NCBI GenBank assembly: GCA_002269645.1
Contig: NIVC01001102.1
Span: 124,001-188,000, forward strand
Length of the DNA stretch: 64,000 nt
Direction: 5' to 3'
Origin: Macrostomum lignano
Taxonomy: Eukaryota
Below the pieces are notes generated by a model. The model worked only from the letters and a program-made list of their open reading frames with translations. It made no database searches and had not been told where the DNA came from. A program made the translations under genes and the position numbers. This document shows positions 1,219 through 59,279 of this stretch, one piece after another (the stretch's first letter is position 1; each line of letters opens with the position of its first letter).

Positions 1219-4371
<3,153 letters not shown>

Positions 4372-28827: not shown

Positions 28828-28924
28828 CATCGTGTCTATCACTCCTTTCACAGTATCTATAAATCCATCCAAATCCTTAATCCTTCTGCTTGAAATAGAG
28901 CCATCAATTTCTCGCTAAAGCAGA

Positions 28925-30555: not shown

Positions 30556-30618
<63 letters not shown>

Positions 30619-30843: not shown

Positions 30844-30890
<47 letters not shown>

Positions 30891-34597: not shown

Positions 34598-34689
34598 TTT
34601 TTTAGTAAGTGTTCAGTAGGGTTTTTGAACAAATCAGCTTTGCTAATTGCCTTTCATGACACCCGCAGCCCCGAGGCAAAGCAATTAGC

Positions 34690-39584: not shown

Positions 39585-40389
39585 TAAAGGTCACAGGAAC
39601 TATTCGGATAAATAATTTTGCTAATAACTAAGTGCGCCTGGCTGCGGCGCCAAAGATCTGCATGGGCGTGTGCATTAGATGAATTTTGTAAATTGTAATC
39701 CAACTTCTAGCTTGTAATCGAGCGAGTCTTCACTGCCGATGTAGCTTACGATAAAAAAAGCATTCGATTCTCATCAAGTGTGCTTGGCTTGTTTTTTCAC
39801 CATCATCTCGACTCACTGCTGGCTGCTGGCTTCCTTTGTCAGCGCCTCAAAGACAGTCTTTTAAAAAAAACCTTTTAACTCCTTGAGAACAAAACAAACG
39901 TGAAAACGGATGCATACAGCAGCTCGTTAACTTGAACTTGAATCGTAAGCATTTAACGATGAGAGAGGGTATTGCTATATTCTACTGCATCTCATGGTAT
40001 ATCTCTCTTTTCAACTCTTCTAACTTTACATGCAGCCTCCATCCTCTTTCTAACGGCTGGTTCCTATTATTTTTGACCTCATCATTACCACGGCAGTATC
40101 CAGCTTTTCTTCTGGGAACCGTTTCCGCTGGCGCGGCCCCATCGATCAAAGCCCCCTGTTAGTCGCCCGCCACTATAATGAGAGGTCAGGTCGGGTGTCG
40201 GGATTCTCGTTATAGCATGTTATACCAAGCTTTTTTCCCGAAAAGCTTTTTCAAAAGCTCACTCCAAAGGCATCATGACCCATGATAGGCAATTGTCATT
40301 TTTTTTAATACTTCACAAACTCTATAAATACAGGTATAGACTTGATTAACAGAATTTTTGCCATGGCTTGGATTTAACGTGAAGAGAAA

Positions 40390-43300
40390 ATGCTGGGAAT
40401 TCGCGAGCTAGCAGTTCTTCCCCTTCTTCTCGGCTGTTACTCAGGAATGGGGAACGGTAAGTTCTGTCTGTCTGTGTGATCGATACGCTAGTATGAGTTT
40501 GATAGAGCAGTGTTCGATAAACTCCGGCCCGTAGAGCCTCTCTATCCGGACCTCGGGTCCTTTAAAGCTTCACAATAGCAATCTGGCCTGCTCAAGGTTT
40601 GTGTCTCTTCTCTTTTCTCTCTCCTTTCATCTGGCCAATAAGGTAAAAAAAAACTTTTCCAACTTCTGCTACAGGTGTAGTATGATCTATAGTTTGTTAA
40701 ATATATTTGTGTATTTCAAACATCAAAATTATCACGAGATTAGAAACTAAAAACTACCAACAGAAAAAGAAATATGCTTTAATTCAAGGTTTTGAAGGTT
40801 CAGTATCGTTGAAAAATTAGTTTTACATGCTGTAATTATTGTATATGCGCTGGTTTCAGTAATAGTATAGAATAGTTTTTATATTCAATCTGGAATTAGT
40901 AAATATAGTAGAAAGAAGATTAACTTATTTTCGGTGCATACGAGACGTAATTTATAAACTGTTACACACAGAGTACACTGGTTGTTAGTTAAGCCAACTG
41001 GATGATCATTCGAATGCTCTTCAGCGCGGTTTTTATGGGTGCGGTGCCCAGCCAATGCATGGCTGAGCTGTGAATCACAGCAGAGTTGTGATAGACCCCG
41101 TTCGGATTGGAATAGCCGCAGTTCTTGAACCACCAGCCCGCGTTTCCGCGGCCATTGGAACAAGTGCCAGAGCCCCCATCGTTGTCGCGGTCCATGGTGG
41201 AGAACTGCATTCCATCCAGATTTTTAAGCGGGTTTTCGGTCGTGTTGGACCTGTCGCTCAAAAACGAAGTGTAGCTCATTTTGTAGTTTGTGCTGGCATC
41301 GGCCACAGAGAAGCCAAAGTGCTCGCTGACGTAGAGCTCATCCGACCAGGTGACGGCCTCGACTCGTAGAAGCTTTGGTGAGCTACCAGCAGTCAGCTCG
41401 TGGATTTTGCGAAGACCTAAAATTACAGTTGCTTTTGTTACTGCACAATTCTTGCACTTAATTATTGAATTAAAACAATTAACTGTGCTCACCGATCCAG
41501 AAGTCTGTCTCATCTCCAAATCCGTCCTCATACTGAGTCCATCCCCTGGCAAAGCTGAGATCGCCCTTCGACCTGTGCTGGATCACTTGGAATTTCTTGC
41601 CGTTAATCTCCACTAGAGTTTCTATAAAAGAAACACGAAATTCGATGTTCAAGCTAATTAACTACAAGCTACAGTTTATCCTTACAGATTTGTTTAAATC
41701 CCATTTAATTTCCCCACAACTCACTATCGCTGTCGATGCTCTTTCGATAAACCAAGCCGCTAGGATCGACGGATGCGAAGTCGGCATTTTGCGTCTCTGT
41801 GAGCAGGCAGACCTTACTCTCAGGGACAAAGGCGAAGGCGGAGCAAAATTTCATATGCGGGGGCTCGCATTTCAGCGCGCAGTCGGCAACGCTTCGACCA
41901 GGCTCTGACGTCATCGGAGCAGCTGTGGTTGGCGAGACCTCGGCAGAAGAAAGCACTGAAAAACAAATTATCTTCCAATTTTTCACTCATCAAGTAGGCT
42001 TTCAGCAAGCAAATTTTACAATGGACCTACCCGACTGTGCTGAGCTGGCGGCAGTCAGAATCGGAGACACGCAGTTCAAGAGAACTGCAGCAGCAATAAG
42101 AAAAGCAGACATGTTGCAGAAGAAAGCTACCAAAAGCACAAGCGAAGCCTTGCTCTTTTTGGGGCTGGCTTAAGTTGGCATTCTTATTTGCAGCTAGAAA
42201 GCCTACTATACAGCAGCGCCAATTAGCTGAAAACCGCATGCTGCTTGAGTCGTTGCGTTGCTAAGCAAGGATTCCAAAAAAACATCCATATCAGTATCAC
42301 CCTCCCTCGGCCCGGCTTCCCTTTTGTCCATGACGCTCGCTCAGCACTAACTATAGTGTGGCTTCCATTTTAAGACTGAGTCGAAATTTGCTTTGCAGAT
42401 TTCGTGAGTAAATGCCAATTAAGCAAACTGGTAAATATGCCTTCACTGCTTAAGAACCTGCCGTTAAGCATCTTTGTAGGCTTCACCAAGTCATCCTCAG
42501 CAGCTATAGGTTGGCTACCCCATTCAAATACTGAAACTTGCCAAGGAGATTCCGGGAATAGCTGCATCTAGGTCTGCATTGATGCCAATTAAGGAAACTA
42601 CCAGCAAAGAATGCAGACTAGTTGAGACCTATCTATAAGGCCCAAAAAGTTAAAACGCACAAAAAGCTCAACTGCTGTGCTTAGACAAATACGGTTGAGA
42701 ACACACGCCCTTCTCTGCTTCTGTTATCCATTGCCTATCCTAGTTGAGGCCCCTGTCTCCAGGTGGAAAACCCTGTCTCTTGGTGTGTGCCCCTGTCTCT
42801 TAAGGTGGGTGCCCCTGTCTCTTGGTGGGTGCCCCTGTCTCTTGGTGGGTGGCCCCTGTCTCTTGGTGGGCGCCCCTGTCTCTTGGTGGGCGCCCCTGTC
42901 TCTTGGTGGGCGCCCCTGTCTCTTGGTGGGCGCCCCTGTCTCTTGGTAAGCGCCCCTGTCTCTTGGTGAGTGGCTCCTGTCTCTTGGTGGGCGCCCCTGT
43001 CTCTTGGTGGGTGGCCCCTGTCTCTTGGTGAGTGGCCCCTGTCTCTTGGTTGGTGGCCCTGTCTCCTGGTGGATGCACCTGAAAAAATGAATGTCTTATA
43101 TGTACTTGCGCAAGCAAACTTATCTACTTACATGTAAAGCTGCATTGCTTGAATTTTTCACCAATGTTTCAGCTAAACGTACTCGCAATTGCCAATTGCC
43201 AATCAATGCTGAAATAAAGTATTGATACGTACGACATTACGGTTCTAGGTGAATTAAATTAGACCAATGGAGGTCATATTGGATCTTAGAATCACACTTC

Positions 43301-44742
43301 CTTCTACCAGAGACATACAATTTTTCTGTTGGGGCGCAAGTTAAATTTAAGTGGGCTAGCCGGCACCAGGGTCTTCAGCACCAGGGGCTTTAGCATCAGG
43401 ATCTTAGCACCAGGGGCTTTAGCACCAGGGGCTTTAGCACCAGGGGCTTTAGCACCAGGGGCTTTAGCACCAGGGGCTTTAGCACCAGGGGCTTTAGCAC
43501 CAGGGGCTTTAGCACCAGGGGCTTTAGCACCAGGGGCTTTAGCACCAGGGGCTTTAGCACCAGGGGCTTTAGCACCAGGGGCTTTAGCACCAGGGGCTTT
43601 AGCACCAGGGGCTTTAGCACCAGGGGCTTTAGCACCAGGGGCTTTAGCACCAGGGGCTTTAGCACCAGGGGCTTTAGCACCAGGGGCTTTAGCACCAGGG
43701 GCTTTAGCACCAGGGGCTTTAGCACCAGGGGCATCAGGATTAACATCATGATTTAAATTCTACTTTCAGACAGCAGCTCAGGCCGTTACGGCTCTATCCA
43801 GGATGCCGTGATCAACGTGACCGGCTGCTACCGTATCGAGGTGGTCGGAGCTAATGGTGGGAACAACTCGAATGTTGACTCTTCAGGTGGCTCCGGAGCT
43901 GCGATCTCGGGAAATTTCAACCTAACGGCCGGAAATCTGCTGAAAATTGTTGTTGGACAGGCCGGGGGAGCCGCGATGTTTTCTTGTGGCGGCGGCGGCG
44001 GCGGTGGCAGCTTCGTGTACACTGCAATTGGCAGCTCCCTGCTGATTGCTGCTGGCGGCGGAGGCGGTGCAACAGGCTTTACACCAGGTGAAAGGAAACT
44101 CATAATTCTCAATACCGAAAACACGCAGTGCTTGGCCTTCAAACAATATCCATAGAGTTTACCTGCATTATCTTTTGCTATCGTTAGTAACGAGTTTGCA
44201 AGATTTTATTACGTCTTTAACTCACTTCACTTCAAGGTTGCAACGGAGAGACAAAATCGAATGGAAGCGATGAAAAAGAGCTTGACGGCAAAAATGCCAC
44301 GGGATTCGGGGGTGTCAACGGTCAGCCTGGCTGGAACAATCCCAACGTCACGCCTGGCTTCAGCAACCACGGCGGCTGCGGCGCCGGCTGGCTCGGCCGG
44401 CCAGTCAAACCGAGGCGAGGCTCCAGCGACGGCGAGCGAGGCGGCGGTCTGGCTGAAAGCTGGGTCGGTGGCGTTGCCGGAGATGGAAGCTATGATTGCG
44501 GAGACGGAGGCTTCGGATGCGGCGGCGGCGGCGGCGGCAGTGGATCGGGATTCGGAGCTGCCGGTGGCGGCGGTGGTTTCAGCGGCGGCGGTGCGTCCTT
44601 AAACGGCGATAACGGCGGAGGCGGCGGCGGCGGCTCATTCTGCGGCGGCAGCGACTGCGCCGGCATCGCTGGCGGTAACACGGCCGAGCAGGGACGAGTG
44701 ACACTGCAGCTGTTGGTACCGGTTGCTGACTGCTGCGGTTGA
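40390..44742 (+). CDS. Secreted ALK/LTK-like glycine-rich-domain protein, copy 1 (signal peptide plus GRD, ~296 aa; exon 1 is tentative)
   Basis: Exons 40390-40456 ([28 protein letters not shown] donor, phase 1), 43770-44087 and 44237-44742. The last exon is open but is missing from the ORF track in its coding frame. GRD motifs: [82 protein letters not shown] and GRVTL. Confidence 0.8.
40989..42112 (-). CDS. Secreted PAN/apple plus fibrinogen C-terminal (FReD) protein, 4 exons, ~289 aa
   Basis: Exons 42112-42031 (signal [21 protein letters not shown]), 41955-41725 (PAN: [21 protein letters not shown]), 41621-41493 ([24 protein letters not shown]...FWIG) and 41416-40989 ([12 protein letters not shown]...CS...GWWFKNC..SNPNGVY...HW). 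All introns are phase 1. Confidence 0.92.
42745..43075. repeat. 20-bp minisatellite (CCCCTGTCTCTTGGTGGGCG)
   Basis: About 16 units; related units occur on the opposite strand at 48270-48400. Confidence 0.92.
43360..43735. repeat. 15-bp minisatellite (CACCAGGGGCTTTAG), highly homogeneous, ending ~35 bp before a GRD exon
   Basis: About 24 units, most of them identical. Confidence 0.97.
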
Positions 44743-45029
44743 GTCGAGTGGCGCAATGAAAAATCAAACAGCTGATAATCTTAAAACTTATCTAACAAGT
44801 TTAACTTTGAATTATACTCAGCAGTGTCAGCAAGCATACAAATTATTGGAGTCACTATAGTAAGTTCTTTATTTCGATTTACATGATGTTCATAAGAGAG
44901 CAATTATGTCAGAGTGCAGACGTCAAAGGCACAATGGAATGACGAGACTTTATATAATAGTCGACTCACGTATTTAAGGCATGCATATAAAGAATTATAG
45001 CTACGATTGGCGTCATAAACAAGCTCATA

Positions 45030-47290
45030 AACACACTCGATCACACTCATAAGCACACTCATGCACTCACTTGTTAACACACCCATAAACACACTCATGT
45101 ACTCACTTGTAAACACATTCAAAAACACACTCATGCACTCACTTGTAAACACATTCATAAACACACTCATGCACTCACTTGTTAACACACCCATAAACAC
45201 ACTCATGTACTCACTTGTAAACACATTCATAAACACACTCATGCACTCACTTGTAAACACATTTATAAACACACTCATGCACTCACTTATAAACACACCC
45301 ATAAACACACTCATGTACTCACTTGTAAACACATTCATGAAGTCACTTATAAACACACCCATAAACACACTCATGTACTCACTTGTAAACACATTCATAA
45401 ACACACTCATGCACTCACTTGTAAACACATTCATAAACACACTCATGCACTCACTTGTTAACACACCCATAAACACACTCATGTACTCACTTGTAAACAC
45501 ATTCATAAACACACTCATGCACTCACTTGTAAACACATTCATAAACACACTCATGCACTCACTTGTTAACACACCCATAAACACACTCATGTACTCACTT
45601 GTAAACACATTCATAAACACACTCATGCACTCACTTGTAAACACATTTATAAACACACTCATGCACTCACTTATAAACACACCCATAAACACACTCATGT
45701 ACTCACTTGTAAACACATTCATGAAGTCACTTATAAACACACCCATAAACACACTCATGTACTCACTTGTAAACACATTCATAAACACACTCATGCACTC
45801 ACTTATAAACACACCCATAAACACACTCATGTACTCACTTGTAAACACATTCATGAAGTCACTTATAAACACACTCATAAACACACTCATGCACTCACTT
45901 GTAAACACATTCATAAACACACTCATGCACTCACTTGTAAACACATTCATAAACACACTCATGCACTCACTTGTTAACACACCCATAAACACACTCATGT
46001 ACTCACTTGTAAACACATTCATGAAGTCACTTATAAACACACCCATAAACACACTCATGTACTCACTTGTAAACACATTCATAAACACACTCATGCACTC
46101 ACTTATAAACACACCCATAAACACACTCATGTACTCACTTGTAAACACATTCATGAAGTCACTTATAAACACACCCATAAACACACTCATGTACTCACTT
46201 GTAAACACATTCATAAACACACTCATGCACTCACTTATAAACACACCCATAAACACACTCATGTACTCACTTGTAAACACATTCATAAACACACTCATGC
46301 ACTCACTTATAAACACACCCATAAACACACTCATGTACTCACTTGTAAACACATTCATGAAGTCACTTATAAACACACCCATAAACACACTCATGCACTC
46401 ACTTGTAAACACATTCATAAACACACTCATGCACTCACTTATAAACACACCCATAAACACACTCATGTACTCACTTGTAAACACATTCATGAAGTCACTT
46501 ATAAACACACCCATAAACACACTCATGCACTCACTTGTAAACACATTCATAAACACACTCATGCACTCACTTATAAACACACCCATAAACACACTCATGT
46601 ACTCACTTGTAAACACATTCATGAAGTCACTTATAAACACACCCATAAACACACTCATGCACTCACTTGTAAACACATTCATAAACACACTCATGCACTC
46701 ACTTATAAACACACCCATAAACACACTCATGTACTCACTTGTAAACACATTCATGAAGTCACTTATAAACACACCCATAAACACACTCATGCACTCACTT
46801 GTAAACACATTCATAAACACACTCATGCACTCACTTATAAACACACCCATAAACACACTCATGTACTCACTTGTAAACACATTCATGAAGTCACTTATAA
46901 ACACACCCATAAACACACTCATGCACTCACTTGTAAACACATTCATAAACACACTCATGCACTCACTTATAAACACACCCATAAACACACTCATGTACTC
47001 ACTTGTAAACACATTCATGAAGTCACTTATAAACACACCCATAAACACACTCATGCACTCACTTATAAGCACACCCATAAACACACTCACGCACTCACTT
47101 ATAAACACACCCATAAACACACTCATGCACTCACTTATAAACACACCCATAAACACACTCATGCACTCACTTATAAACACACCCATAAACACACTCATGC
47201 ACTCACTTATAAACACACCCATAAACACACTCATGCACTCACTTATAAACACACCCATAAACACACTCACGCACTCACTTGTAAACATAC
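45030..47290. repeat. 2.2-kb satellite of 36-bp and 24-bp monomers with higher-order structure
   Basis: Monomers ATAAACACACTCATGCACTCACTTGTAAACACATTC (36 bp) and ATGAAGTCACTTATAAACACACCC (24 bp); a 132-bp higher-order unit repeats in the distal half. Confidence 0.95.
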
Positions 47291-48269
47291 TAAAAAAACT
47301 AACTTACAAACTCAGAACCAGACAGACATGTTGAACAATCTGTTGCAGTTTAAGTTGCATAGAAGCTTTGTATAATGTACTGTATGTGAAATTAACTTGT
47401 ATTTCTGGTTCCATCCAGTCATCTCCTACATGCACGTTTGTCAAAAAACAACCGGTAACCGGGTACTTGCTAAGTGCAGATTTTCCAATAAAAAGACAAA
47501 CTACATGCAAGGAATGGGGTAGGTATGAACACACATCATGCACTTTCGTTTGAGACAATCTGCACGCTGCTACTGCATGACCACTGACGTTTTCGGTTTT
47601 TCACCTTTTGAGGATTGCAAAGATTTCACCTTTGAGACATGTATTTCTGTCAGTTTGTCTGCAGCACGTGTCAGACGTGCATGAACTAACTAATTGTAAC
47701 CTGAACTCATGCTTTTCTGACATGATGCGACCTGAACCCATCAATAGCGATCGGTCGCATGAATTCACAACGTCGTACTGGATGCCTTTCTGTTAAATGA
47801 AATTTAAAGGCTTGATTAAAGTTTAAGTGCATAAGGTGAAGGATTTGTCTATCAAATTTGGGCCAAAAAATTTTGAGATATTTGTACTGGACCGTTTAAA
47901 AAATCTTTGGTATATAAATATAGCCTAGCTCTAAAATGTTAATTTAATATTGAACGTTCAAAAGTACAGTTATCTTTTCTATACGGTTCATGCGGTTTCG
48001 CCGTAGAAAAGTCAGGTCAGGTCAAGAAATTTTGTTTGTCGAGAGACTTCCCTATCTCGCTGATGCAATATGCAGCAGAGAACCGCGCGGCTTCCAGCGA
48101 AATTTTTATCATATACGTGTGCTGTTTCTTTCAACTTCAGCTGTCCAAATGCCCAAAGTACCCTCGTAAGTACACATTAGCGAGGTAGTTCGATCTCGCT
48201 ATAGTGGCACACGCAAAAGGGACAGGGAGGTCACCCCACCACCACAAATTTGCCCTCGCCCACAGATAG

Positions 48270-48400
48270 AGAGGCGCCCACCAAGAGACAGGGGGATCCA
48301 CCAAGAGACAGGCCGGGTGGCCACCAAGAGACAGGGATGTCCACCAAGAGAAAGGGGTGTCCATTCAGAGACATTGCCACATTGGGCGCTCACCAAAGAC
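48270..48400. repeat. Short array of the CACCAAGAGACAGGGG family
   Basis: Reverse complement of the 42745-43075 unit. Confidence 0.8.
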
Positions 48401-49044
48401 ACTAAATACTGCCTCCCTCATGCTTGCGACCCTATCCAATTAGACCTGTTCTACTAACAGTAGTAAAAATGAATTCTAACAAATTATTTTTGATTATGAG
48501 CTCTACCACATTGTCAGCTGCATCCCTTCTCTGCATTTAGACTGCCGTGCAGAACTGCAAAACAAAATACATTTAGATGTAGCAATACTTTATATTAACA
48601 GCTTACAGTCAGAAAGACAATTTTCTTACAGACTATATTCTTCTGAATTGAGGGAAGCGAAACTTCTCAAGCAAACCTCTTCAAAGAAAAAACAGAGGCT
48701 TTAGGAAGTTGCCTCAACAAAAGACATCTCACTAAGCGCACTGCAGCTTCTAGTAGACATTCAGGCAAGTATGACAAGGGTGCGCTTCACAATGGGACAG
48801 AAGTTTTATTTTAAGAAGTTTTTCGCGCTTTCAAGTTGACTAGCAGCTTAGGTCTATGCAGCCAATGAGAATTAACAAATTCCTTCTGTCTATCTAGTAG
48901 AAACAGTAGACAAGATCCATGAATATTGTCTTGGTAAAAAACATAAAAACAGGCACGCATCCTATGACATTTAGAATCTCTAAATTCTAAGTTAACTATC
49001 TTCTACATATGTACTTCAAAACTAATTAATAAGGCTAACAAGCC

Positions 49045-52000
49045 ATGAATTCGCACACTATGATATTGCATCTCGAACTGGTGATGCTATGGTGCCTCGG
49101 AAACACTGCAACAGCAATTGGGAAAGGTATGTTGCATACGCAATGTAGATAAAACAATCATATAGAAGCGACTTCTAAAAACTATACAGGTGAAAACCAC
49201 ATCTGTGTTTCAGAGTCATGCTCAAAGTACACTCGAAACCCAAGCGCTATGCCATTCCCCACGGCTGCCATGAGCAGCAATGTCGCCAACTTCACGGACG
49301 TGCCGACAGATTTGGACTGTGTGAACAGGTGCCGGCTGAGAAAGTGCTCAGTTGCCGTGTTCGTCCCAACAAGTAGCATCTGTCAGCTGGCATTTGCCTC
49401 CGACATCAATGGGAGTTACGTGATGCGATCGCTGGGCTCGGAGGTCGGCGCGAGCGTTTGGACAGCGGAGGGAACCGATGAGAAGCTGCGGATTTTGATG
49501 CAGCAGCTGATTCAGAATAATACTGCGGCTTTGAAAAGTGAGACAAGCAGACAGGGGCGTCGCCAATAAGGGGCATAGGGACATGACCCCCCAGTAAAAG
49601 CTATGGGGCCTGCCAATCATTCTTTGTCCCCCCCCCTGCCCCACATTGTGAACCGTAATTGAAGTCAATGATTTTGCCTCAGAGCGCCTAGACATAGGCG
49701 CCTAAATACAAAGTGTGTCTGCGGCGAAAAAATGAGTGCTTTGTCTGCGGCGCCAAAATTAGTGCCTGCCTGCGGCGCCAAAATAAGTGCTTGCCTGAAG
49801 CGCCGAAATTAATGCTTGCGGTGCCAAAATGAGTGCCTGAGGCGCAAAAATTAGTGCTTTGCCTGCGGCGACAAAATGAATGCCTGCCTGCGGCGCCAAA
49901 ATGAGTGCCTGCCTGCGGCGCCAAAATGAGTGCCTGCCTGCGGCGCCAAAATGAGTGCCTGCTTGCGGTGCCAAAATGAGTGCCTGCCTGCGGCGCCAAA
50001 ATAAGTGCCTGTCTGAGGCGCCAAAATGAGTGCCTGCCTGCGGCGCCAAAATGAGTGCCTGTCTGAGGCGCCAAAATGAGTGCCTGCCTGCGGCGCCAAA
50101 ATGAGTGCCTGTCTGAGGCGCCAAAATGAGTGCCTGCCTGCGGCGCCAAAATGAGTGCCTGCCTGCGGCGCCAAAATGAGTGCCTGTCTGAGGCGCCAAA
50201 ATGAGTGCCTGCCTGCGGCGCCAAAATGAGTGCCTGCTTGCGGCGCCAAAATGAGTGCCTGTCTGAGGCGCCAAAATGAGTGCCTGCCTGCGGCGCCAAA
50301 ATGAGTGCCTGCCTGCGGCGCCAAAATGAGTGCCTGTCTGAGGCGCCAAAATGAGTGCCTGCCTGCGGCGCCAAAATGAGTGCCTGCCTGCGGCGCCAAA
50401 ATGAGTGCCTGTCTGAGGCGCCAAAATGAGTGCCTGCCTGCGGCGCCAAAATGAGTGCCTGTCTGAGGCGCCAAAATGAGTGCCTGCCTGCGGCGCCAAA
50501 ATAAGTGCCTGCTTGCGGCGCCAAAATGAGTGCCCGAGGCGCCAAAATGAGTGCCTGCCTGCGGCGCCAAAATGAGTGCCTGTCTGAGGCGCCAAAATGA
50601 GTGCCTGCCTGCGGCGCCAAAATGAGTGCCTGTCTGAGGCGCCAAAATGAGTGCCTGCCTGCGGCGCCAAAATAAGTGCCTGCTTGCGGCGCCAAAATGA
50701 GTGCCCGAGGCGCCAAAATGAGTGCCTGCCTGCGGCGCCAAAATGAGTGCCTGTCTGAGGCGCCAAAATGAGTGCCTGCCTGCGGCGCCAAAATAAGTGC
50801 CTGCTTGCGGCGCCAAAATGAGTGCCCGAGGCGCCAAAATGAGTGCCCGAGGCGCCAAAATGAGTGCCCGAGGCGCCAAAATGAGTGCCCGAGGCGCCAA
50901 AATGAGTGCCTGAGGCGCCAAAAAATAAGTGCTACTAGCAACGCCGATTCCCAAAATATGTAGGAATTTTGTGCGTAGAATTGTCGCCTTTGTCCTCCGC
51001 AACCATAAAATCCATGGCGACGCCCCCGCATACATGCACAGGTATTGTATTGGTCAGTTAAACTTAGGAATCTATCAATAAGACTCCATGCATGTATTAC
51101 CAGCTCAAATTGAGACAGGTCAATATCCTTCATTAATTTGCGAAAAGGACCAAGTTTTTATTCTGGATTATCGTACTACAGCTACTAGATCCTATATACT
51201 AAAAGTACACTTTGATGTGGTTGAGGTACATATATCTAATAATTAATACACTTCTCCCAAAACCGAATGCAAGACAGCGACTCAGGCAGAAGGGGCTCCA
51301 TCCAGCTCGCTGTGATCAACGTGACCGGCTGCTACCGCATCAAAGCGACCGGCGCCAAAGGCGGCGACAACCCATGGGGCAGACCCGGCGGATTCGGAGC
51401 TTCTGTCAATGGTACTTTCGCCTTGACAGCTGGAACCGTTCTGAGCATTGTCGTGGGACAGGCTGTGGCCCGGCCGCTTCTGGTTATGCCGCAGGCGGTG
51501 GAGGAGGCGGCAGCTTCGTCTACCGGGCTGGGGACGCCCGACCGCTGATCGCGGCAGGCGGCGGCGGAGGCGCCGGATATGCCCGCATCGGTGAGTGAGA
51601 ACTTTACTATTAAAGCCGCTCTTAGAGATTCACCAGTTGAGATTGGGTTTTTGCTCTTGATCGACGTCCTTACATGTTACGAGCGTATGTGCGCACAGCT
51701 GGGTGAACTGAAGCAATGCAGAGTTGCAAAGTCTAGATGAAGGACACAATTGTTACAGTGGGATCTGGAATCGCGAATCCCCGACCTTCAAGTCATAAGT
51801 CATACGGTCTAACCACAAAGGAGGCGACAGCAGCCGCTGTCGAACCCGACGCCACCCGCTGGCGACCCCCCAGTCCTTGGACTGAACAGCCGTACGCAGC
51901 CTTCGATGCGCCGCGCAATAGCTGCGGCTGAGCTGTCGGTTGCACATCTGGCCCAATCAATTATTATTATGTGCGCACCTTACTACTGACGAGGGCGCCT

Positions 52001-52705
52001 CGAAGCTACAAAAGCCAGGCGTTAGCCTCACGGGTCTGAACAAAAGCGCGTTAAGTCGGGGATCGGTTGTGTGAAGTTTGCTAGCGAGGACTTGCTTGCG
52101 AAATCCTTGTTCTGATGGCCTAGTGTGATGTGAATTGCGTCACTCGTGAGGCTGAGATCTGGGAAAAGTTGACCACTGGACCTTCCTCTTCATTGCCGCA
52201 TTCAGGATTGCCAGGAGAGGCACAGGCAAATGCAAGCAACGCATTCGAGTCAAGCTCTGGCAGCTACGGACTCGGGGGCATCAACGGTCAGCCGGGCTAC
52301 AACAACCCCAGCTCAACACCTGGGAGCAGCAACCACGGCGGTTGCGGAGCCGGCTGGCTGGGAAAGGCGGTCAAGGCGAGGGGGCTCACGACCGACGGAG
52401 ATCGAGGCAAAAGTCTGGCCAACGGCTGGGTCGGTGGCGTTGCTGGCAATGGCAACACAGGTGTCGGCGGCTTCGGGGGCGGAGGCGGCGGCGGCGGCAC
52501 CGGCGGTGATCGAAGGGGAGCTGCCGGCGGTGGCGGCGGCTTCAGCGGCGGCGGCGCCTCCGTAATCCGTGGCTCCGGCGGAGGCGGCGGCGGCTCGTTC
52601 TGCGGCGGCAGCGGCTGCACCGCCGTCGCTGGAGGCGGCTCGGGTAGCGAGCATGGAGAAGTGACGCTACGGCTCGTAGCTCCGTTTGCCGACAGCTGCG
52701 ACTGA
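49045..52705 (+). CDS. Secreted PAN plus ALK/LTK-like glycine-rich-domain protein, copy 2, carrying a 1-nt frameshift (pseudogene or assembly error)
   Basis: Exons 49045-49126 (signal), 49190-49537 (PAN: DCVNRCRLRKCSVAVFVPTSSICQL), 51274-51590 and 52206-52705. The third exon is 317 nt, against 318 nt in copy 1. The frame switches after IVVGQA at ~51464, with [19 protein letters not shown] continuing in another frame. Confidence 0.82.
49552..51028. mobile_element. Non-autonomous TIR element (~1.48 kb) containing a 25-bp minisatellite
   Basis: Ends CAGGGGCGTCGCCA / TGGCGACGCCCCCG (13/14 inverted match). The TSD is not convincing. Confidence 0.6.
49740..50920. repeat. 25-bp minisatellite (GGCGCCAAAATGAGTGCCTGCCTGC)
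   Basis: About 45 units; it explains the RQALILAPQ ORFs. Confidence 0.96.
51697..51967. mobile_element. SINE family A copy with an inverted 5' half and an 11-bp TSD
   Basis: The head and core are on the minus strand (~51697-51825) and the 3' part and tail are on the plus strand (~51860-51967). TATGTGCGCAC is repeated at 51686-51696 and 51968-51978. Confidence 0.8.
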
Positions 52706-53183
52706 CCTCGACTGATCTGATTCTCTAAGCCGCCAGATTGCAAGGAACACGTGTGTTGTGCCAGAAACCATTTTACGAGGATATGCAAACGTGCAATTTA
52801 CTGATTCCTTTTGTGAAGCTTAAAGCTAATGTTCTTAGCTCACAGAACTTACAGTAGAATTATTCAATAGTAAATGAAGTATAACCTGGTTCTGTAAGCA
52901 GTCTACAACGTACAACGCAATTAAGGACTACTCAAGTAACATATATATAGGACGCAACACTCGAAATCTGTGGTAAATCTTTTCAAGGCAACTTTTCGCC
53001 GAAAAATACACTACAGAGATAGGAGGTTTTAATTTTTTCAGCACAAAAATTGTTATTGCTTTTGATAGGAGGCAGATCCAGTGTTCATCTGTTGATATGC
53101 TGTGCCTTTCTTATAGCTCTATTGGTATTCATAAAGCTTCTTCTTCAGAAAATTAGGATTCTATGCTAATTTTTTATTCTACC

Positions 53184-53538
53184 TACATTTCCTGGGGGTG
53201 CTTTCACAAGGTCGAAATTTCACAACGTCGAAAAGTAAATTATTTCACAAGGTCGAACCTTCACAAGGTCAAAATTTCACAACATCGAAACCTTTAGCAA
53301 AGGACTTCATAAGGTCGAAATTTCACAACGTAGAAAACTCAAATGGCAGCCACTTTCGACCTTATGAAGTCTCTTGCTAAAGTTTTCGATGTTGTGAAAT
53401 TTCGACCTTGTGAAGTTTCGACCTTGTGAAAGTGGCTGCTATTTGAGTTTTCGATGTTCTGAAATTTCGATCTTGTGAAAGGTGCTTTCGACGTTGTGAA
53501 ATTTCGAGTTTGTGAAACCCCCCCCCCCGGCAAATGTA
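53184..53538. mobile_element. Foldback MITE built from TTTCACAAGGTCGAAA-like subrepeats
   Basis: Palindromic overall: the left arm has forward subrepeats and the right arm their reverse complements; ends TACATTT / AAATGTA. Confidence 0.8.
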
Positions 53539-54610
53539 CCCAAAAATCATAAAAATGCACGGCACAGCTCGAATTTTTGGTTTTGAGAATCTCTGTTACA
53601 CATATTGTTACACAGTAAGCTAAGAATGATAAAATGGATTCATAAAACCAGAGATGAGCCGTGCTATTTTAATGATTTTTAGGCACATGAGACATGCAAA
53701 TGTACGTATAATAATAATTAAACATTGAATCTTAGTGTTGCGTCCTTCTGCTTAAGTTGTCCTTGGTACAACGAAGGACTACTACATGTACGTTTCTTAG
53801 AAATCCTTGCGTACAACAAGTGTAGCATCTCGAAACTTCTAATCCATTGACGCAAACCAGAATAAAAAAATATGTAAGTTAAAAAAACAATTCATCTAAA
53901 TATGTATATCTCCGAATTAATAACTAGCAAATACCATTAAAAATGGCCTTTATAATTGCAAATATATGTATTTGTTCAGTAAATTGCAATCCAATATAGT
54001 TAGTGAAAACAAAAAAATTACCTAACTATCGTAGTACTAACGCAAAGCTGGAAGATATTGCTGCCAAAATGACACAACAGACAAATTTTGAAATGCCTTC
54101 ATTTCTTCATTAAAACAGTAGCAGCAGCTATAGGTACGCAGATAGGTAGAGTTGAACAATTAGGAAACCTTGAAATCCGCAGGTCATTTCAAAGGGAAAA
54201 TACGAGTAAATCGAAGTCAAAATCCAAAAACATTAAAAACAAGCCATCCTAACAGTTCGAGACATTTACGAGTATTTTATAATTGTTTAATAATAACTTA
54301 CATAAGCTTTAAACTTTAACTTTAAACTTAAAGCTTTTACATAAGCGATGTGCTTCTTTATGTCTTTTGTTTGCCGGTGTAATAGAGCCCCTAACCACAA
54401 GTACTGAGAATTGAGATAGAAAACAAACGGCCTAATACAGTGCACATGTATTGTAGTTAGTTAGTACAGGCTTGTGCTTCAATGTGTGACTGAAGGATTC
54501 ATTTGCTTGACAGATTTGACAGTTTTTACCATAGACAAATGGCGCAGCGGATTTAACAACAGAATGACCTCAGCAACAAAAATACTCTAAACTAAAAGTC
54601 GCAGCAATAA

Positions 54611-57078
54611 TTATTTCACTTCAACATCGCCACTTCCATCAACATTACAACTCGATTTCTTAACATCCTCGCCACTAAGCAGCGACACTCCAACCGATTT
54701 CAAAGCTTCAACAGCCCACTCTGGATAATCTGTCGGATTAGGATATTGCAAGCGAAAGAATTGACGAACAAACTCTGAAAATTTGCCGTCAACTAGACTC
54801 TGTCGCATCTCGGACATTAGATTGAGCATATAAGCTACGTTGTGAGCAGTGAGCAGACTGCAGCCCAGGGTTACACCGTCCTCTTTGAGCAGTGTAGCCA
54901 AATAAGCACGAGAGTAGCCGCCGGTACAGCAGGGACAGCTGCACCGATCGTCAATAGGTCTCAAGTCAGTTTCAAACTGTCGCTTCTTCAACTGCAACTG
55001 ACCTTCTGGCACCAGCGCCACACCGAATCGTGCAGTTCTAGTTGGCAAAACGCAATCAAACATGTCTACGCCAAGCGCAACGCAAACAACCAGATCTAAT
55101 GGTAGGCCGACGCCCATCAAATAGCGCGGCTTACCAGCTGGTAATCTTTCTGTGCACAATTTAACAATTCGCCAAAATGTTGACTTAGCTTCGCCGCCGC
55201 TAAGACCGCCAATAGCAAAACCAGCTACATCTCTACTAGCCAGCGCATCTAGCGATTGAATGCGCAGATCCGAGTCCAGACCGCCTTGCACTATTGGGAA
55301 TAGGCACTGTTGTGTAGGACGAGCATTGGCTGCCAAACAGCGGTCCAACCAGCGTATGGAGCTGGACAAATCAATGTGACAGGGTGTTGATTAGCATCAA
55401 GTTGGGCATGTTGCGAGAAGTGATGGAGTGCTGAAGGTGGGACAGATGGGCAAAGGAGCAGAGGCAGGTAACAGTGAAGTGGAGAGATATGTAGAGTCGC
55501 AGACCATATGGACCTAATAATCAAACATTGAATTCTAGTTCCAACGCTGTGTTTGAGACAACACAAGCAAACTAAAGAAGTACATGATGTACTAGTAACT
55601 TAACCAGGCGAGGTAAAACCACGAGAGCCCATTGAATTTAAGCAATTTTAAGTGAGGCTACATAATTCTATTGAAATAAAAGAGTAAAAGACAATTTTAA
55701 CAAGCAACCGCTAGATAAACAGTTGCAAGTTGTTGTAATTTGATTTTAAATAGCCTGCAAACTACAGAAGGTTAAAACAGGCTGAAAACTAGGAAGAAAC
55801 TAAAGCAGGGGTCGGTGAACTCCTTTATTGAAACTTGAAAATAGCATCCGACCCGCTCAAGGTTGGTGTCTCTTCTATGCTTCCTCTCACCTCTTCTCTC
55901 ATCTCTCTTCTCTCCTCTCCCCTCTTCTCTCCTCTTATCTATCTGTTCTCTCATTGCATCTCTCACATGTCCTCCCCATTATTTTCTCTGATCCGTCATC
56001 TATTCCCTCTCCTTTTTATTCTCATCCAGCCCGCTGTCATGAGCTGGATTCTTTATCTGGCCCTTGAGGTAAAAAGTTTGCCAAACCTTACGGCCTAGAA
56101 GGTACAGAGACTAAGAAATAAAAGGTTTGTTGCGACATAATCTAAGCTCTAGTACTTTTATTAGTAAATGAAGTTTAGAATAGATACTAAATCTTTATTT
56201 TTTCCTTCTAAAGCTACTTATGTCGAGATTAGACATAAAATACTCGTCAATCTCACCGTTCCATAGCCTCTTTCACGCGCGGCCCAGTTGTACTGCTGTG
56301 CACAACATCGTCTAACTGCATCATTATATCCGCGCCAATACCATTCTGAATTCTAATAGATTCTTCAGGAGTTAATCGAAGCTCAGTGCCATCGTAGGGG
56401 CTGGTGAATGTGACGCCGCCTTCGTCAATATTGCAAAGCTTGGATAGCGAGACCATTTGAAAGCCGCCAGAATCTGTCAACAGAGCGTGCGGCCAGTGCA
56501 TGTAGCCGTGAAGACCGCCGGATGCAGACAGGATTTCTGGGCCTGGTCTTTTCGAGGGAAAGGAAATTCATTTGTTTGAGCCAAGTTATAGTTAGTCAGG
56601 GAGAGGGTTAAGCTTGTCTCTATCAAGGACCGATCCCCAAGGCACAGAGGGTGCACATGCCTGGCGATTAGAAAGTCAGGGACACTGTACACCCTGTATG
56701 AGCATGTGTACGAGTGCATGCCGGCGTACAGTATTGGCGTGCTTGTGTGTGCTCAGGCGCTGGTTGTGGAATGACCTTTAACTACTTGGCACCCAAATAT
56801 CGCCAAAATCGAATTTTTATCTTTTTTTCTATTAGCATAACAAGCAAGCCTTACCTACAACCCAGGTGATAAGTGTTTCCAAGCATAATTCGGCAACCAA
56901 GTTTGCTCAATTCGTCAGTTGTCAATGCTTTCAAACTGCCTTTAGTGCCAACTGGCATAAACACTGGAGTGTCCACAGTAGCATGGGGTAATTGCATTTT
57001 AGCTGTGCGAGCTGCCGTAGTGCCGCACTTGCTAATTATGTTGAATTTCAAAGGATAAGCTGCATTGCTAGTAGCCAT
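54611..57078 (-). CDS. QTRT1: Queuine tRNA-ribosyltransferase catalytic subunit (3 exons, ~421 aa)
   Basis: Exons 57078-56855, 56547-56257 and 55361-54611 are phase-consistent. Motifs: [67 protein letters not shown] and the Zn site CSCPCC...HN. Confidence 0.96.
55806..56090. mobile_element. hAT/Charlie-like MITE copy in QTRT1 intron 2
   Basis: Ends CAGGGGTCGGTGAACT / AGTTTGCCAAACC with a CT-rich interior, like 36540-36967. Confidence 0.62.
56615..56770 (+). mobile_element. SINE family B, partial copy in QTRT1 intron 1
   Basis: CCCCAAGGCACAG..GTGCACATGCC..AGAAAGTCAGG..CTGTACAC is the reverse complement of the family B core. Confidence 0.65.
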
Positions 57079-58477: not shown

Positions 58478-58740
58478 CGTGATGCATTATTGCCTATTCC
58501 ACCGACTCCCCTGAGCAGGCATATAAGTGCACAGATACATACGTAGGCACACACTCACACAGGAGTGTACAGCGGCCCTAACTTCATTAGGCATGTACAC
58601 TTCACTGTGCCTTGGGGGGTTGGCTCTCAAGGCCGTTAATTGCACGAGCAGAGCCAAGCCGAGATTCCAATTCAGCCCCAAATTAATGTGACTACACTTG
58701 GAATCAAGCCTGGGTTGCTGGCCTGCGTGTTAGGGCTGCA
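58478..58740 (-). mobile_element. SINE family B, near-full copy
   Basis: Collinear with 9075-9360, including the CTGAGCAGGCA tail and the CACTTGGAATC head junction. Confidence 0.75.
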
Positions 58741-59279
58741 ATAAAATTAAATGATTCCCCCAGAATAGGGGGGATTGGTTTGGGCTGAGTGTACATAGCA
58801 AAGTACATTGTAAGCAGATAGATAGGACTGTGTCAAGATTCAATTGGTTTTATTATTGGCATCTTTCAAAAGGCAGCCCTGTGTATTAGGTGGGCAGTGA
58901 AATTCAATGAATAAACTTGCGAGCATTTTACTGTAGCAGGCAGTGAATGTACACTCAATACTTCAATGCTTTAAATCAGGAAGTTCAAAGGCTAACTGTT
59001 CCTTGAGTTTTAAGCTTTGAGAGGAGAGAATTATATTGCTGAGAAGATCTTGCAACGCTGAGTTTAGGGATAAGTTATTTGCTTTAAATATGAAAACAAA
59101 AAGCACAGCATTGAAAAAATGATTTCTATACTTTTAAACTTTCTGCCAAGATTGTAGTTGGGGGGGGGGGGGTTGCGTTGCGTACACAAATTCAAGCCAG
59201 CTATCATTTGTGCAATTTCAGTAATGGAGGAGGTGGGTGAAAAATTTCAATTAGTTTAATTATTGGCAATTTCAGTCCA

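What the first reader, a model, noticed from the sequence alone, without database searches (positions are those of the whole stretch)
40390..52705. Cluster of secreted, kinase-less ALK/LTK-type glycine-rich-domain proteins
Seen: two paralogous genes share intron positions and encode the motif order of the ALK/LTK ectodomain GRD (IQ..YRI...[56 protein letters not shown]). Each has a signal peptide and stops right after the domain, with no TM or kinase. Known: in ALK/LTK this TNF-like/polyglycine-II module binds ligand and mediates receptor dimerisation. Inference: soluble decoys or ligands, or an immune or mucus/adhesive effector family using the polyglycine-II lattice. This is the best candidate for an undescribed system in the window.
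Basis: partly seen in the sequence, partly recalled or inferred. Interest (0 to 1): 0.75.

Follow-up and report, generated by a model that had tools for sequence, protein, structure and literature searches.

The report
Secreted kinase-less ALK-type glycine-rich-domain genes
Two neighbouring flatworm (Macrostomum lignano) genes encode small secreted proteins made of the same glycine-rich fold that the ALK/LTK receptors use to bind their ligands. They have no membrane anchor or kinase, one copy has a broken reading frame, and such kinase-less proteins turn out to be a very large, already catalogued but functionally unstudied family.

Summary
Window 40390-52705 holds two tandem paralogues on the + strand that encode the ALK/LTK glycine-rich domain (GRD).

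- **Fold and homology:** a profile built around gene A matches ALK/LTK GRD chains at E=8e-51. An AlphaFold model (pLDDT 89) retrieves only ALK/LTK GRD structures from the PDB (21 hits, E 5e-10 to 3e-7).
- **Architecture:** both genes have a signal-peptide exon, share three phase-1 intron positions and stop 8-12 residues after the domain. No kinase motif occurs anywhere in the 64 kb.

- Gene B has an extra PAN/Apple exon.
- Gene B's first GRD exon carries a 1-nt frame break, so as assembled it stops after 214 aa.
- Gene A lacks PAN. Its 3.3-kb first intron holds a PAN+fibrinogen-domain gene on the opposite strand.

The window is M. lignano scaffold NIVC01001102.1. No annotated protein closer than 61-63% identity was found for any of the three genes, and the part of the GenBank gene list I could see (from 44611 on, covering gene B) calls no gene there.

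Kinase-less GRD proteins are the rule, not the exception. There are about 19,700 clusters at 50% identity, including phage tail-fibre-like proteins. PAN-GRD paralogues from M. lignano, a coral and a brachiopod are already in databases.

Most likely these are secreted binding/recognition proteins, not ALK decoys. I rate this a new member of a known kind, of moderate interest.

The parts
40323..40330 (+). TATAAATA box, 60-67 nt upstream of gene A's ATG (putative promoter element)
   Evidence: Read directly from the sequence. An in-frame TAA lies 4 codons upstream of the ATG.
40390..40456 (+). Gene A exon 1: signal peptide [22 protein letters not shown] plus 1 nt, with donor G|GTAAGT (phase 1)
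   Evidence: The hydrophobic core [10 protein letters not shown] has a Kyte-Doolittle mean of 2.55. Its phase is compatible with the GRD exon. The assignment to gene A is inferred; there is no transcript evidence.
43770..44087 (+). Gene A exon 2: first half of the GRD (TNF-like strands, [20 protein letters not shown])
   Evidence: The acceptor is tttcag|AC and the donor is CAG|GTGAAA.
44237..44742 (+). Gene A exon 3: second half of the GRD ([49 protein letters not shown]) and the TGA stop at 44740-44742
49045..49126 (+). Gene B exon 1: signal peptide MNSHTMILHLELVMLWCLGNTATAIGK plus 1 nt, with donor G|GTATGT (phase 1)
49214..49537 (+). Gene B exon 2: PAN/Apple-like module with four conserved Cys, then a linker
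   Evidence: PF00024 gives E=0.0018 and 18.5 bits, below the 21.4 cut-off. The Cys pattern aligns with M. lignano GRD-family and FReD-family PAN modules. The AF2 model (pLDDT 71.5) has PAN/Apple-type modules (HGF N-domain, plasminogen PAp) as its top 22 PDB hits, and most of the rest (leech antiplatelet protein, Sarcocystis lectin, factor XI) are also PAN/Apple-type. These matches are weak: E 0.009-0.1.
51274..51590 (+). Gene B exon 3: first half of the GRD, with a 1-nt frame break at about 51464/51465. As assembled, the reading frame stops at 51546-51548.
52206..52705 (+). Gene B exon 4: second half of the GRD and the TGA stop at 52703-52705
40989..41990 (-). Gene for a signal-like peptide + PAN + fibrinogen C-terminal domain protein. 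It lies on the opposite strand, inside gene A's putative first intron.
   Evidence: PF00147 gives E=5.8e-23 and PF00024 E=1e-4. M. lignano paralogues have the SP-PAN-FReD architecture at up to 63% identity. The 5' end is unresolved: the only nearby ATG (41990) is out of frame.
42749..43081 (.). 20-nt satellite in gene A's intron 1. An inverted copy of the same repeat lies at 48257-48373, upstream of gene B.
43363..43732 (.). 15-nt satellite (24.7 copies) immediately upstream of gene A's first GRD exon
45013..47291 (.). 2.3-kb satellite (36/132-nt period) filling most of the spacer between genes A and B
49719..50912 (.). 25-nt satellite (49 copies) inside gene B's intron 2

Best explanation
The region holds a head-to-tail pair of Macrostomum lignano genes for small secreted proteins. 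Their only large module is a free-standing ALK/LTK-type glycine-rich domain: a TNF-like beta-sandwich plus a polyglycine-II lattice.

- Gene A is signal peptide + GRD (296 aa) and is intact.
- Gene B is signal peptide + PAN/Apple + GRD (407 codons). It carries a single-base frame break, so it is either a young pseudogene or an assembly indel.

They belong to a lineage-expanded, fast-diverging M. lignano family, most of whose members have the SP-PAN-GRD architecture.

Shown: fold, homology, exon structure, absence of TM and kinase, family size.

Inferred: the proteins act outside the cell as binding/recognition (adhesin- or lectin-like) molecules. The conserved glycine motifs would build a rigid scaffold, and the variable segments between them, together with the PAN module, would provide the binding surface. 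This resembles the way GRD-bearing phage fibre proteins and the neighbouring PAN-fibrinogen lectin-type genes are thought to work. They are not receptors, and nothing indicates that they are ALK decoys.
For: Homology and fold:
- Gene A's GRD matches M. lignano proteins at E=1e-57, many of which carry PF12810.
- The family profile matches PDB ALK/LTK GRD chains at E=8e-51 to 2e-46 over the whole domain, SCD-2 at 5e-23, and nothing else.
- The AF2 model has pLDDT 89.1 and pTM 0.90.
- The top 21 Foldseek PDB hits are all ALK/LTK TG/GRD (TM 0.53-0.64). The next hit is at E=0.22.

Secretion and absence of receptor parts:
- Both genes have signal-like first exons.
- N-glycosylation sequons such as INVTGCY are conserved across paralogues.
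- The stop comes 8-12 residues after the last strand, as in full-length homologues.
- No kinase signature occurs in any of the six frames of the 64 kb.

Real eukaryotic genes:
- Phase-1 GT..AG introns are shared by both copies.
- The window is 100% identical to M. lignano scaffold NIVC01001102.1.

PAN-GRD architecture recurs:
- It is seen in gene B and in M. lignano P0001/P0002/P0013/P0018.
- It is seen in the octocoral protein P0076 (PAN_1 E=1e-7). The Lingula protein P0039 has EGF_CA plus a GRD; its N-terminus looks PAN-like by eye, but Pfam reports no PAN there.
- An unidentified eukaryotic contig has an SP-PAN ORF 2.7 kb upstream of a GRD ORF on the same strand.

Binding-module reading:
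- Conserved Gly motifs alternate with variable segments.
- A and B have dN/dS of about 0.4 and 59.5% identity.
- The same whole-domain fold is found in cyanophage virion, tail-fibre and tail-collar proteins, with TM up to 0.72.
- The adjacent gene is an SP-PAN-fibrinogen-domain protein with the same type of PAN module.
Against: - There is no transcript or protein evidence for either gene. No protein closer than 61% identity turned up among 5.8e9 clusters. The GenBank gene list for this scaffold shows no gene over gene B.
- Gene B cannot make a full GRD as assembled.
- Joining gene A's signal exon across a 3.3-kb intron that holds another gene rests only on phase compatibility and on analogy with gene B.
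- The Pfam gathering threshold for PF12810 is not reached.
- The binding function rests on analogy. No ligand, oligomeric state or expression site is known.
- The dN/dS estimate includes some badly aligned N-terminal codons, and dS (0.86) is near saturation.
Confidence: 0.6

Rival explanations
1. Soluble decoy receptors or modulators of ALK signalling: the free GRD captures the flatworm's ALK ligand or heterodimerises with the receptor's GRD.
For: It has the same fold as the ligand-binding and dimerising module of ALK/LTK, and it is secreted.
Against: - The GRD is a generic module found in about 19,700 clusters, with no kinase in the ones I sampled, and in phage structural proteins.
- The M. 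lignano proteins lack the ~35-residue N-terminal segment of the ALK TNF-like subdomain that coral and brachiopod homologues keep.
- The two neighbouring paralogues are only 59.5% identical, and the family has at least five or six divergent M. lignano subfamilies. That is unlike a decoy tracking one conserved ligand.
- From general knowledge, ALKAL ligands are vertebrate-specific.
- No ALK or ligand gene lies in the window.
Confidence: 0.08
2. Both genes are dead or dying copies: untranscribed relics of a birth-and-death family sitting in satellite-rich DNA.
For: - Gene B has a frame break and a premature stop.
- The nested PAN-FReD gene lacks an in-frame ATG.
- No annotated or database protein matches any of the three genes.
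- No canonical AATAAA follows either stop codon.
- Four satellite families crowd the locus.
Against: - Gene A has an intact 296-codon frame across three exons with canonical splice sites.
- Gene B has only one lesion and no other stop in 407 codons.
- dN/dS of about 0.4 indicates constraint over most of the divergence.
- Several database models of this M. lignano family also show frame-shifted stretches. P0007, P0017, P0021 and P0022 read 'SLVAAEPVGLASPPPPA' where '[10 protein letters not shown]' is expected. This suggests that indels, possibly assembly errors, are common in these GC-rich glycine runs.
Confidence: 0.2
3. Low-complexity structural glycine-rich proteins (loricrin-, eggshell- or cuticle-like) whose resemblance to ALK is compositional.
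For: - Gene A is 31% glycine.
- Database names such as 'loricrin' and 'PE-PGRS family protein' have been given to homologues.
- HMMER bias correction removes most of the Pfam score.
Against: - Identity at non-Gly columns is 54%.
- Ordered, collinear motifs match ALK over the whole domain at E=8e-51.
- The globular model is confident, with a beta-sandwich (pLDDT 89), and retrieves only GRD structures.
Confidence: 0.04
4. Bacterial or viral contamination, or a recent horizontal transfer that is not a functioning animal gene.
For: Many homologues come from bacterial metagenomes and phages.
Against: - Spliceosomal introns sit at conserved positions in both copies.
- The genes are embedded in an M. 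lignano scaffold next to a TGT gene 99% identical to the M. lignano protein.
- The closest relatives are other M. lignano genes.
Confidence: 0.02

Closest known systems
ALK/LTK ligand-binding TG supradomain (TNF-like + glycine-rich; PDB 7NX1, 7N00, 7LRZ; C. elegans SCD-2, 7LIR)
   Same: Whole-domain sequence-profile match (E=8e-51) and the only PDB fold match (TM 0.53-0.64). The order of motifs is the same, from 'GIQ..Y.I..GA.GG' to 'G.V.I'.
   Different: - It has no EGF-like domain, TM helix or kinase.
- It lacks the first ~35 residues of the ALK TNF-like subdomain.
- It is preceded by a signal peptide alone (gene A) or a signal peptide plus PAN/Apple (gene B).
- It is only 22-25% identical to ALK/LTK in the structural alignment.
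Pfam PF12810 (ALK_LTK_GRD, formerly 'glycine rich protein') kinase-less members
   Same: Same domain. Close M. lignano homologues carry precomputed PF12810 hits. The family is very large, and the ten mid-sized members I sampled have no kinase. A 2016 fungal genome paper records that non-ALK members have unknown function (PMC4859500).
   Different: The window's own proteins fall below the Pfam gathering score (14.3 against 24.5 bits). Many family members are giant multi-GRD proteins, whereas these have a single GRD.
M. lignano UniProt 'Apple domain-containing protein' A0A1I8HRN4 / A0A1I8GD17 (P0001/P0002) and relatives
   Same: Same species and same SP-PAN-linker-GRD architecture as gene B. Both share the '(N)SSxGRxGSIQ' junction after the PAN exon.
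   Different: They are only 54-65% identical to genes A and B by exon (56-61% overall), so they are different paralogues. Gene A has no PAN.
Dendronephthya gigantea LOC114528171 and Lingula anatina 'loricrin' (P0076, P0039)
   Same: Secreted, kinase-less proteins with N-terminal modules followed by a GRD: PAN in the octocoral, EGF_CA in Lingula. Both end right after the domain.
   Different: They are about 35-40% identical. They retain the N-terminal 'FTNLGA.GR.GP' segment that the flatworm proteins lack.
GRD-fold proteins of phages and giant viruses (cyanophage virion structural, tail-fibre and tail-collar proteins), and by analogy the phage S16 gp38 polyglycine-II adhesin
   Same: Whole-domain fold match, with TM up to 0.72 and E down to 8e-14. 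Conserved glycine motifs separated by variable segments are, from general knowledge, the logic described for gp38 adhesins.
   Different: gp38 itself did not appear among the PDB fold hits. The viral proteins are parts of virions, not secreted animal proteins.
Invertebrate fibrinogen-related proteins (FREPs/FReDs)
   Same: The nested neighbour is a PAN + fibrinogen-domain protein. It shares the same type of N-terminal PAN module and the same general design: a signal peptide, a PAN module and a C-terminal globular binding domain.
   Different: The C-terminal fold is different. The link to the GRD genes rests on position and a shared module only.

Membership tests
ALK/LTK receptor tyrosine kinases | Extracellular TNF-like + glycine-rich (TG/GRD) supradomain | tested here: met
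   The family profile matches PDB ALK/LTK chains at E=8e-51. The top 21 Foldseek hits are all ALK/LTK.
ALK/LTK receptor tyrosine kinases | Membrane-proximal EGF-like domain after the GRD | tested here: not met
   Both reading frames stop 8-12 residues after the last GRD strand. Homologues end at the same place.
ALK/LTK receptor tyrosine kinases | Transmembrane helix and cytoplasmic tyrosine-kinase domain | tested here: not met
   The scan of all six frames of the 64 kb found no HRDxxxxN, DFG or PVRWMAPE-type motif; the only pattern match was a single isolated G-loop-like string at 63432, which I take to be chance. What follows gene A is a satellite, and what follows gene B is a TGT gene on the other strand.
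ALK/LTK receptor tyrosine kinases | Binds ALKAL / Jeb / HEN-1-type ligands | not testable with these tools
   Needs binding assays. No ligand gene is in the window.
Pfam PF12810 ALK_LTK_GRD domain family | Score at or above the Pfam gathering threshold (24.5 bits) | tested here: not met
   Gene A scores 14.3 bits (E=0.041) and gene B gives no hit. The shortfall comes from glycine bias correction. Homologues P0039, P0234, P0296 and P0367 pass.
Pfam PF12810 ALK_LTK_GRD domain family | Full-length collinear homology to bona fide GRDs, and the same fold | tested here: met
PAN/Apple domain (PF00024) in gene B exon 2 | Pfam threshold of 21.4 bits, the conserved Cys pattern and the PAN fold | tested here: inconclusive
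   Pfam gives 18.5 bits (E=0.0018), below the cut-off. Four Cys align with M. lignano and coral PAN modules. The AF2 model (pLDDT 71.5) has PAN/Apple structures as its top 22 PDB hits, but only at E 0.009-0.1.
PAN/Apple domain in gene A | Any PAN-like exon between the signal exon and the GRD exons | tested here: not met
   tblastn with gene B's PAN exon and with M. lignano homologues finds none on the + strand at 40457-43769. Three-frame reading shows only a short '[10 protein letters not shown]' resemblance at about 42006-42040, followed by no PAN cysteines.
Fibrinogen-related proteins (the nested neighbour) | Fibrinogen C-terminal globular domain | tested here: met
   PF00147 gives E=5.8e-23 and 82 bits. 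Paralogues in M. lignano are annotated as such.
Phage gp38-type polyglycine-II adhesins | Fold similarity to the S16 gp38 structure | tested here: not met
   gp38 is not among the 50 PDB hits listed (E up to 5.5). Similarity is instead to viral proteins that carry the whole GRD fold.

The most novel reading that the evidence does not exclude
Free-standing secreted PAN-GRD proteins are an old metazoan family, present in cnidarians, brachiopods and flatworms. They may represent the kind of protein from which the ALK/LTK ligand-binding module was recruited. In Macrostomum they would have expanded into a rapidly diversifying repertoire of soluble recognition molecules, immune or reproductive. These would use the invariant polyglycine-II lattice as a scaffold and the variable inter-motif loops as the binding surface, making them an animal counterpart of phage fibre adhesins. 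They may be co-organised with PAN-fibrinogen lectin genes.
Probability: 0.2. Interest if true: 0.6.

Novelty: new member of a known kind. Interest (0 to 1): 0.35.

Why it matters
**Evolution of the ALK/LTK module.** The ALK/LTK glycine-rich domain is usually discussed as a peculiarity of two receptor kinases. This locus, and the family behind it, shows the same fold working as a stand-alone secreted module in animals, often behind a PAN/Apple domain, and in very many proteins without kinases. That bears on where the ALK ligand-binding module came from. It also offers small, single-domain, probably glycosylated proteins in which the fold could be studied apart from a receptor.

**Annotation.**
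- No annotated counterpart was found for any of the three secreted-protein genes here.
- Relatives are auto-named 'receptor protein-tyrosine kinase', 'PE-PGRS family protein' or 'loricrin', which is misleading.

**Limits.** The biological role in the worm is unknown, and one of the two copies may be dead.

Tried and rejected
- **Direct Pfam scan of both proteins.** Nothing at E<=0.01, and only PF12810 at E=0.041 for gene A. I rejected this as a negative result because composition-bias correction suppresses the score. The profile and fold tests are decisive.
- **Single-sequence phmmer against the PDB.** Only ALK chains came up, at E about 0.14. This was superseded by the profile search.
- **Search for a PAN exon in gene A.** I used tblastn with gene B's PAN exon and M. 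lignano homologues, blastn of A against B, and three-frame reading of 41900-42700. None was found. The only PAN hit is on the minus strand and belongs to the fibrinogen-domain gene.
- **Independent check of gene B's frame break.** The only matching record is the same assembly as the window (GCA_002269645.1, 100% identity, 0 gaps over 19,390 nt), so it gives no independent evidence.
- **Looking for near-identical proteins.** The best hit for gene A's GRD is 61% identical, and the best for the fibrinogen-domain gene is 63%.
- **Kinase-motif scan of all six frames.** No credible kinase motif; the single G-loop-like match at 63432 stands alone.
- **Poly(A) signal search downstream of both stops.** No canonical AATAAA; uninformative.
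- **Literature searches** for kinase-less GRD proteins, 'PF12810', and Macrostomum with glycine-rich, ALK or Apple-domain terms. The only relevant statement found is that PF12810 proteins have unknown function in a fungus. De Munck et al. 2021 is not held in the library.
- **Considered and rejected:** A and B as one two-GRD gene (A ends in a stop and B has its own signal exon); a trans-spliced start for gene A at the 43770 acceptor (no usable in-frame ATG).

Full report
**What is in the sequence.** The window is eukaryotic. On the + strand between 40390 and 52705 there are two genes whose main coding exons encode the same glycine-rich domain.

Exact models with canonical GT..AG junctions were worked out from the sequence:
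- Gene A: 40390-40456 (signal peptide [22 protein letters not shown]), 43770-44087 and 44237-44742 (stop included). It encodes 296 aa in an uninterrupted frame.
- Gene B: 49045-49126 (signal peptide MNSHTMILHLELVMLWCLGNTATAIGK), 49214-49537, 51274-51590 and 52206-52705 (stop included). This gives 407 codons if one position is bridged.

All junctions are phase 1. Three are at equivalent positions in A and B: the end of the signal exon, the acceptor before '(D/N)SxSGRxGSIQ', and the intron inside 'G|xxGE' in the middle of the domain.

**Corrections to the observation.**
1. Gene B's first GRD exon is one base short relative to gene A just after 'VVGQA', at about 51464/51465. 'IVVGQA' is in one frame and '[19 protein letters not shown]...' is in another. 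As assembled the product ends at 51546-51548 after 214 aa, giving only the signal peptide, PAN and a fragment of the domain.
2. Gene B has an extra exon (49214-49537) encoding a PAN/Apple-like module. Three lines support this. Pfam PF00024 gives E=0.0018, just under threshold. Four cysteines align with PAN modules of M. lignano and of a coral homologue. A moderate AF2 model (pLDDT 71.5) has PAN/Apple-type folds as its top 22 PDB hits, at weak E-values of 0.009-0.1.
3. Gene A has no such exon. Its signal exon joins in frame directly to the GRD exon across a 3313-nt intron. This junction is inferred from phase compatibility, the parallel with gene B's exon 1, an upstream TATAAATA (40323-40330) and an in-frame stop before the ATG. 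There is no transcript evidence.
4. Inside that intron, on the minus strand (about 41990 to 40989), lies a third gene. It encodes a signal-like peptide, a PAN module and a fibrinogen C-terminal domain (PF00147 E=5.8e-23).
5. tblastn finds only these two GRD copies in the window.

**Is it more than chance?** Yes.
- The GRD exon pairs align at the DNA level at E=3e-71 and 1e-18.
- The proteins are 59.5% identical, and still 54% identical at columns without glycine.
- Gene A's domain finds M. lignano proteins at E=1e-57, many with precomputed PF12810 hits.
- Direct Pfam scanning fails: 14.3 bits against a cut-off of 24.5 for gene A, and nothing for gene B. Single-sequence phmmer finds only ALK chains, at E about 0.14. 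Both results reflect bias correction on a 31%-glycine sequence.
- A profile of 45 family members with gene A as first sequence matches ALK and LTK GRD chains over the whole domain at E=8e-51 to 2e-46. It matches C. elegans SCD-2 at 5e-23 and nothing else in the PDB.
- AlphaFold2 on that alignment gives pLDDT 89.1 and pTM 0.90.
- The 21 best Foldseek PDB hits are all ALK/LTK TG/GRD structures (E 5e-10 to 3e-7, TM 0.53-0.64). The next hit is at E=0.22.

The second test, cDNA splicing onward to TM/kinase exons, could not be run because no transcript data were available. The indirect evidence is against it: the stops match where homologues end, and the window holds no kinase motif.

**No receptor parts.**
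- Both frames stop 8-12 residues after the last beta-strand ('[16 protein letters not shown]' and 'GEVTLRLVAPFADSCD*'). Full-length homologues from M. lignano, an octocoral and a brachiopod end at the same place.
- A six-frame scan of all 64 kb finds no tyrosine-kinase signature.
- Downstream of gene A is a 2.3-kb satellite. Downstream of gene B is a queuine tRNA-ribosyltransferase gene on the other strand.

**Origin and annotation.** The TGT fragment is 99% identical to M. lignano BOX15_Mlig032107g1. Window 44611-64000 is 100% identical, without gaps, to GCA_002269645.1 scaffold NIVC01001102.1. The window is therefore that assembly, which means I could not check gene B's frame break against independent data.

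The gene list for that scaffold shows no gene over gene B. No database protein is closer than 61% to gene A's domain or 63% to the fibrinogen-domain gene. So none of the three secreted-protein genes has an annotated counterpart that I could find.

The fibrinogen-domain gene also lacks an in-frame ATG before its signal-like ORF; the ATG at 41990 is one base out of frame. Several older M. lignano models of the GRD family read through frame-shifted glycine runs (P0007, P0017, P0021, P0022). Single-base indels therefore seem common in this family. Whether gene B's lesion is a real mutation or an assembly error is open, and I put it near even odds.

**The family.**
- M. lignano has at least 14 clusters at 90% identity, falling into five or six divergent subfamilies. 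Most have a signal peptide, a PAN/Apple module, a linker ending in 'NSSxGRxGSIQ', and then the GRD.
- The same PAN-then-GRD design occurs in Dendronephthya gigantea (PAN_1 E=1e-7). In Lingula anatina the GRD follows an EGF_CA module; its N-terminus also looks PAN-like by eye, but Pfam does not report PAN. In an unidentified eukaryotic contig, an SP-PAN ORF lies 2.7 kb upstream of an intronless GRD ORF.
- The flatworm domains lack the ~35 N-terminal residues ('FT..GA.G..GPT...') that ALK, the coral and the brachiopod proteins have.
- A profile search of 1.84 billion representatives finds 19,722 clusters at E<=1e-3, 10,988 at E<=1e-10 and 4,983 at E<=1e-30. These include proteins of 2-7 thousand residues with up to 12 matched GRD stretches.
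- None of ten mid-sized hits has a kinase; eight show PF12810, most as their only domain.
- The model also matches 57 viral proteins at E<=1e-3. These include cyanophage virion structural, tail-collar and short-tail-fibre proteins, with TM up to 0.72, better than to ALK. Many are auto-named 'receptor protein-tyrosine kinase'.

Kinase-less GRD proteins are thus the large majority, and ALK/LTK are the exception.

**How it most likely works.**

Shown: a signal peptide, conserved N-glycosylation sequons such as 'INVTGCY', a compact GRD fold, and nothing else (gene A) or a PAN module in front (gene B).

Inferred: these are secreted extracellular binding proteins. In the family alignment, invariant glycine motifs ([10 protein letters not shown], Lx[46 protein letters not shown]) alternate with segments that differ freely between paralogues. 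The glycine motifs would build the polyglycine-II lattice and the strands of the TNF-like sandwich. The variable segments and the PAN module would form the surface that contacts a target.

The supporting evidence is circumstantial:
- the same fold sits in phage fibre and virion proteins;
- PAN/Apple modules are, from general knowledge, protein- and carbohydrate-binding modules;
- the nested neighbour combines the same type of PAN module with a fibrinogen domain, the classic invertebrate lectin-type recognition domain;
- the family shows the birth-and-death signature of expansion, fast divergence (dN/dS about 0.4, dS about 0.86) and a possibly dead copy.

I put about 0.9 on the identity claim (secreted, kinase-less GRD paralogues) and about 0.45 on the binding/recognition mechanism.

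**Rivals.**
- The decoy-receptor idea has only the shared fold in its favour. It is weakened by the ubiquity of the fold, the missing N-terminal segment, and the divergence among paralogues. I give it about 0.08.
- The 'dead relics' reading (about 0.2) is supported for gene B but not for gene A, which is intact.
- The 'compositional look-alike / structural glycine-rich protein' reading is contradicted by non-glycine identity, profile collinearity and the confident globular model.
- Contamination or recent transfer is contradicted by the shared spliceosomal introns and the flanking flatworm genes.

**Comparison with what is known.** These proteins contain the ALK/LTK GRD but are not ALK/LTK family members: the EGF-like domain, TM and kinase were tested and are absent. 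They are members of the PF12810 domain family by profile and fold, although below Pfam's own threshold. Their nearest described relatives are uncharacterised database entries ('Apple domain-containing protein' in M. lignano). I found no paper describing secreted animal GRD proteins. The one paper that mentions PF12810 says only that no function can be inferred (PMC4859500).

**Verdict.** The locus is a tandem pair, one copy intact and one frame-broken, with a nested PAN-fibrinogen gene, in a satellite-rich and largely unannotated stretch of the M. lignano genome. It is a new member of a known, very large and functionally unexplored domain family, not a new system. Interest is moderate (0.35). 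The most interesting open points are whether these proteins are expressed, what they bind, and whether such secreted PAN-GRD proteins are the evolutionary source of the ALK ligand-binding module.

Noticed in passing
window 40989-41990 (-): A PAN + fibrinogen C-terminal domain gene lies on the opposite strand inside gene A's putative first intron. It belongs to an M. lignano SP-PAN-FReD family (best paralogue 63% identical), and no annotated protein matching it was found. Its signal-like ORF has no in-frame ATG: the ATG at 41990 is one base out of frame.
   Followed up: partly
window 42749-43081 and 48257-48373: The same 20-nt satellite (GCCCCTGTCTCTTGGTGGGT) occurs in gene A's intron and, inverted, about 700 nt upstream of gene B. 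Apart from the GRD exons, it is the only similarity between the two gene regions.
   Followed up: partly
window 43363-43732, 45013-47291, 49719-50912: Three more satellite families (15-nt, 36/132-nt, 25-nt) sit in introns and in the spacer of the gene pair. Each produces long spurious ORFs in several frames.
   Followed up: partly
window 44611-64000 (= L003 22510-3121): The window is 100% identical to M. lignano assembly GCA_002269645.1, scaffold NIVC01001102.1. In that record's gene list, no gene is called between the TGT gene and 44611.
   Followed up: yes
database homologues P0004, P0008, P0017, P0018, P0022, P0006, P0021, P0039; BFVD hits: Short kinase-less GRD proteins of the flatworm, a brachiopod and many phages carry automatic names such as 'receptor protein-tyrosine kinase', 'PE-PGRS family protein', 'loricrin' or 'Calmodulin' (a fused model). 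These names are misleading.
   Followed up: partly
database homologues P0007, P0017, P0021, P0022: These M. lignano models read 'SLVAAEPVGLASPPPPA...' where paralogues have '[10 protein letters not shown]...'. That is a frame-shifted translation of the same glycine-rich DNA, so indels (real or from assembly) recur in this family.
   Followed up: no
L001 6938-7330 and 10001-10909; L004 10001-10948: An unidentified eukaryote assembled from an ENA metagenome (contigs of 0.9-2.4 Mb) has at least eight intronless GRD paralogues, 39-42% identical to gene A. One has a signal peptide + PAN ORF 2.7 kb upstream on the same strand.
   Followed up: partly
representative library hits P0219-P0368: Proteins of 2,000-7,000 residues have up to 12 matched GRD stretches. 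Their organisms are unknown because the library has no names.
   Followed up: no
window 54614-57192 (-), about 63531-64000 (+): A queuine tRNA-ribosyltransferase gene (99% identical to M. lignano BOX15_Mlig032107g1) lies just downstream of gene B. Part of a V-type ATPase subunit D gene is at the window's end.
   Followed up: partly
window 8422-12769 (-), 28919-33722 (+), and satellites at about 1687-3258, 11435-12769, 30030-30728, 33999-34711: Long ORFs here look like exons of a PDZ/ankyrin-repeat gene and of a lysine-rich nucleolar-type gene. Further microsatellite-like arrays are also present. I saw these only in the ORF listing.
   Followed up: no
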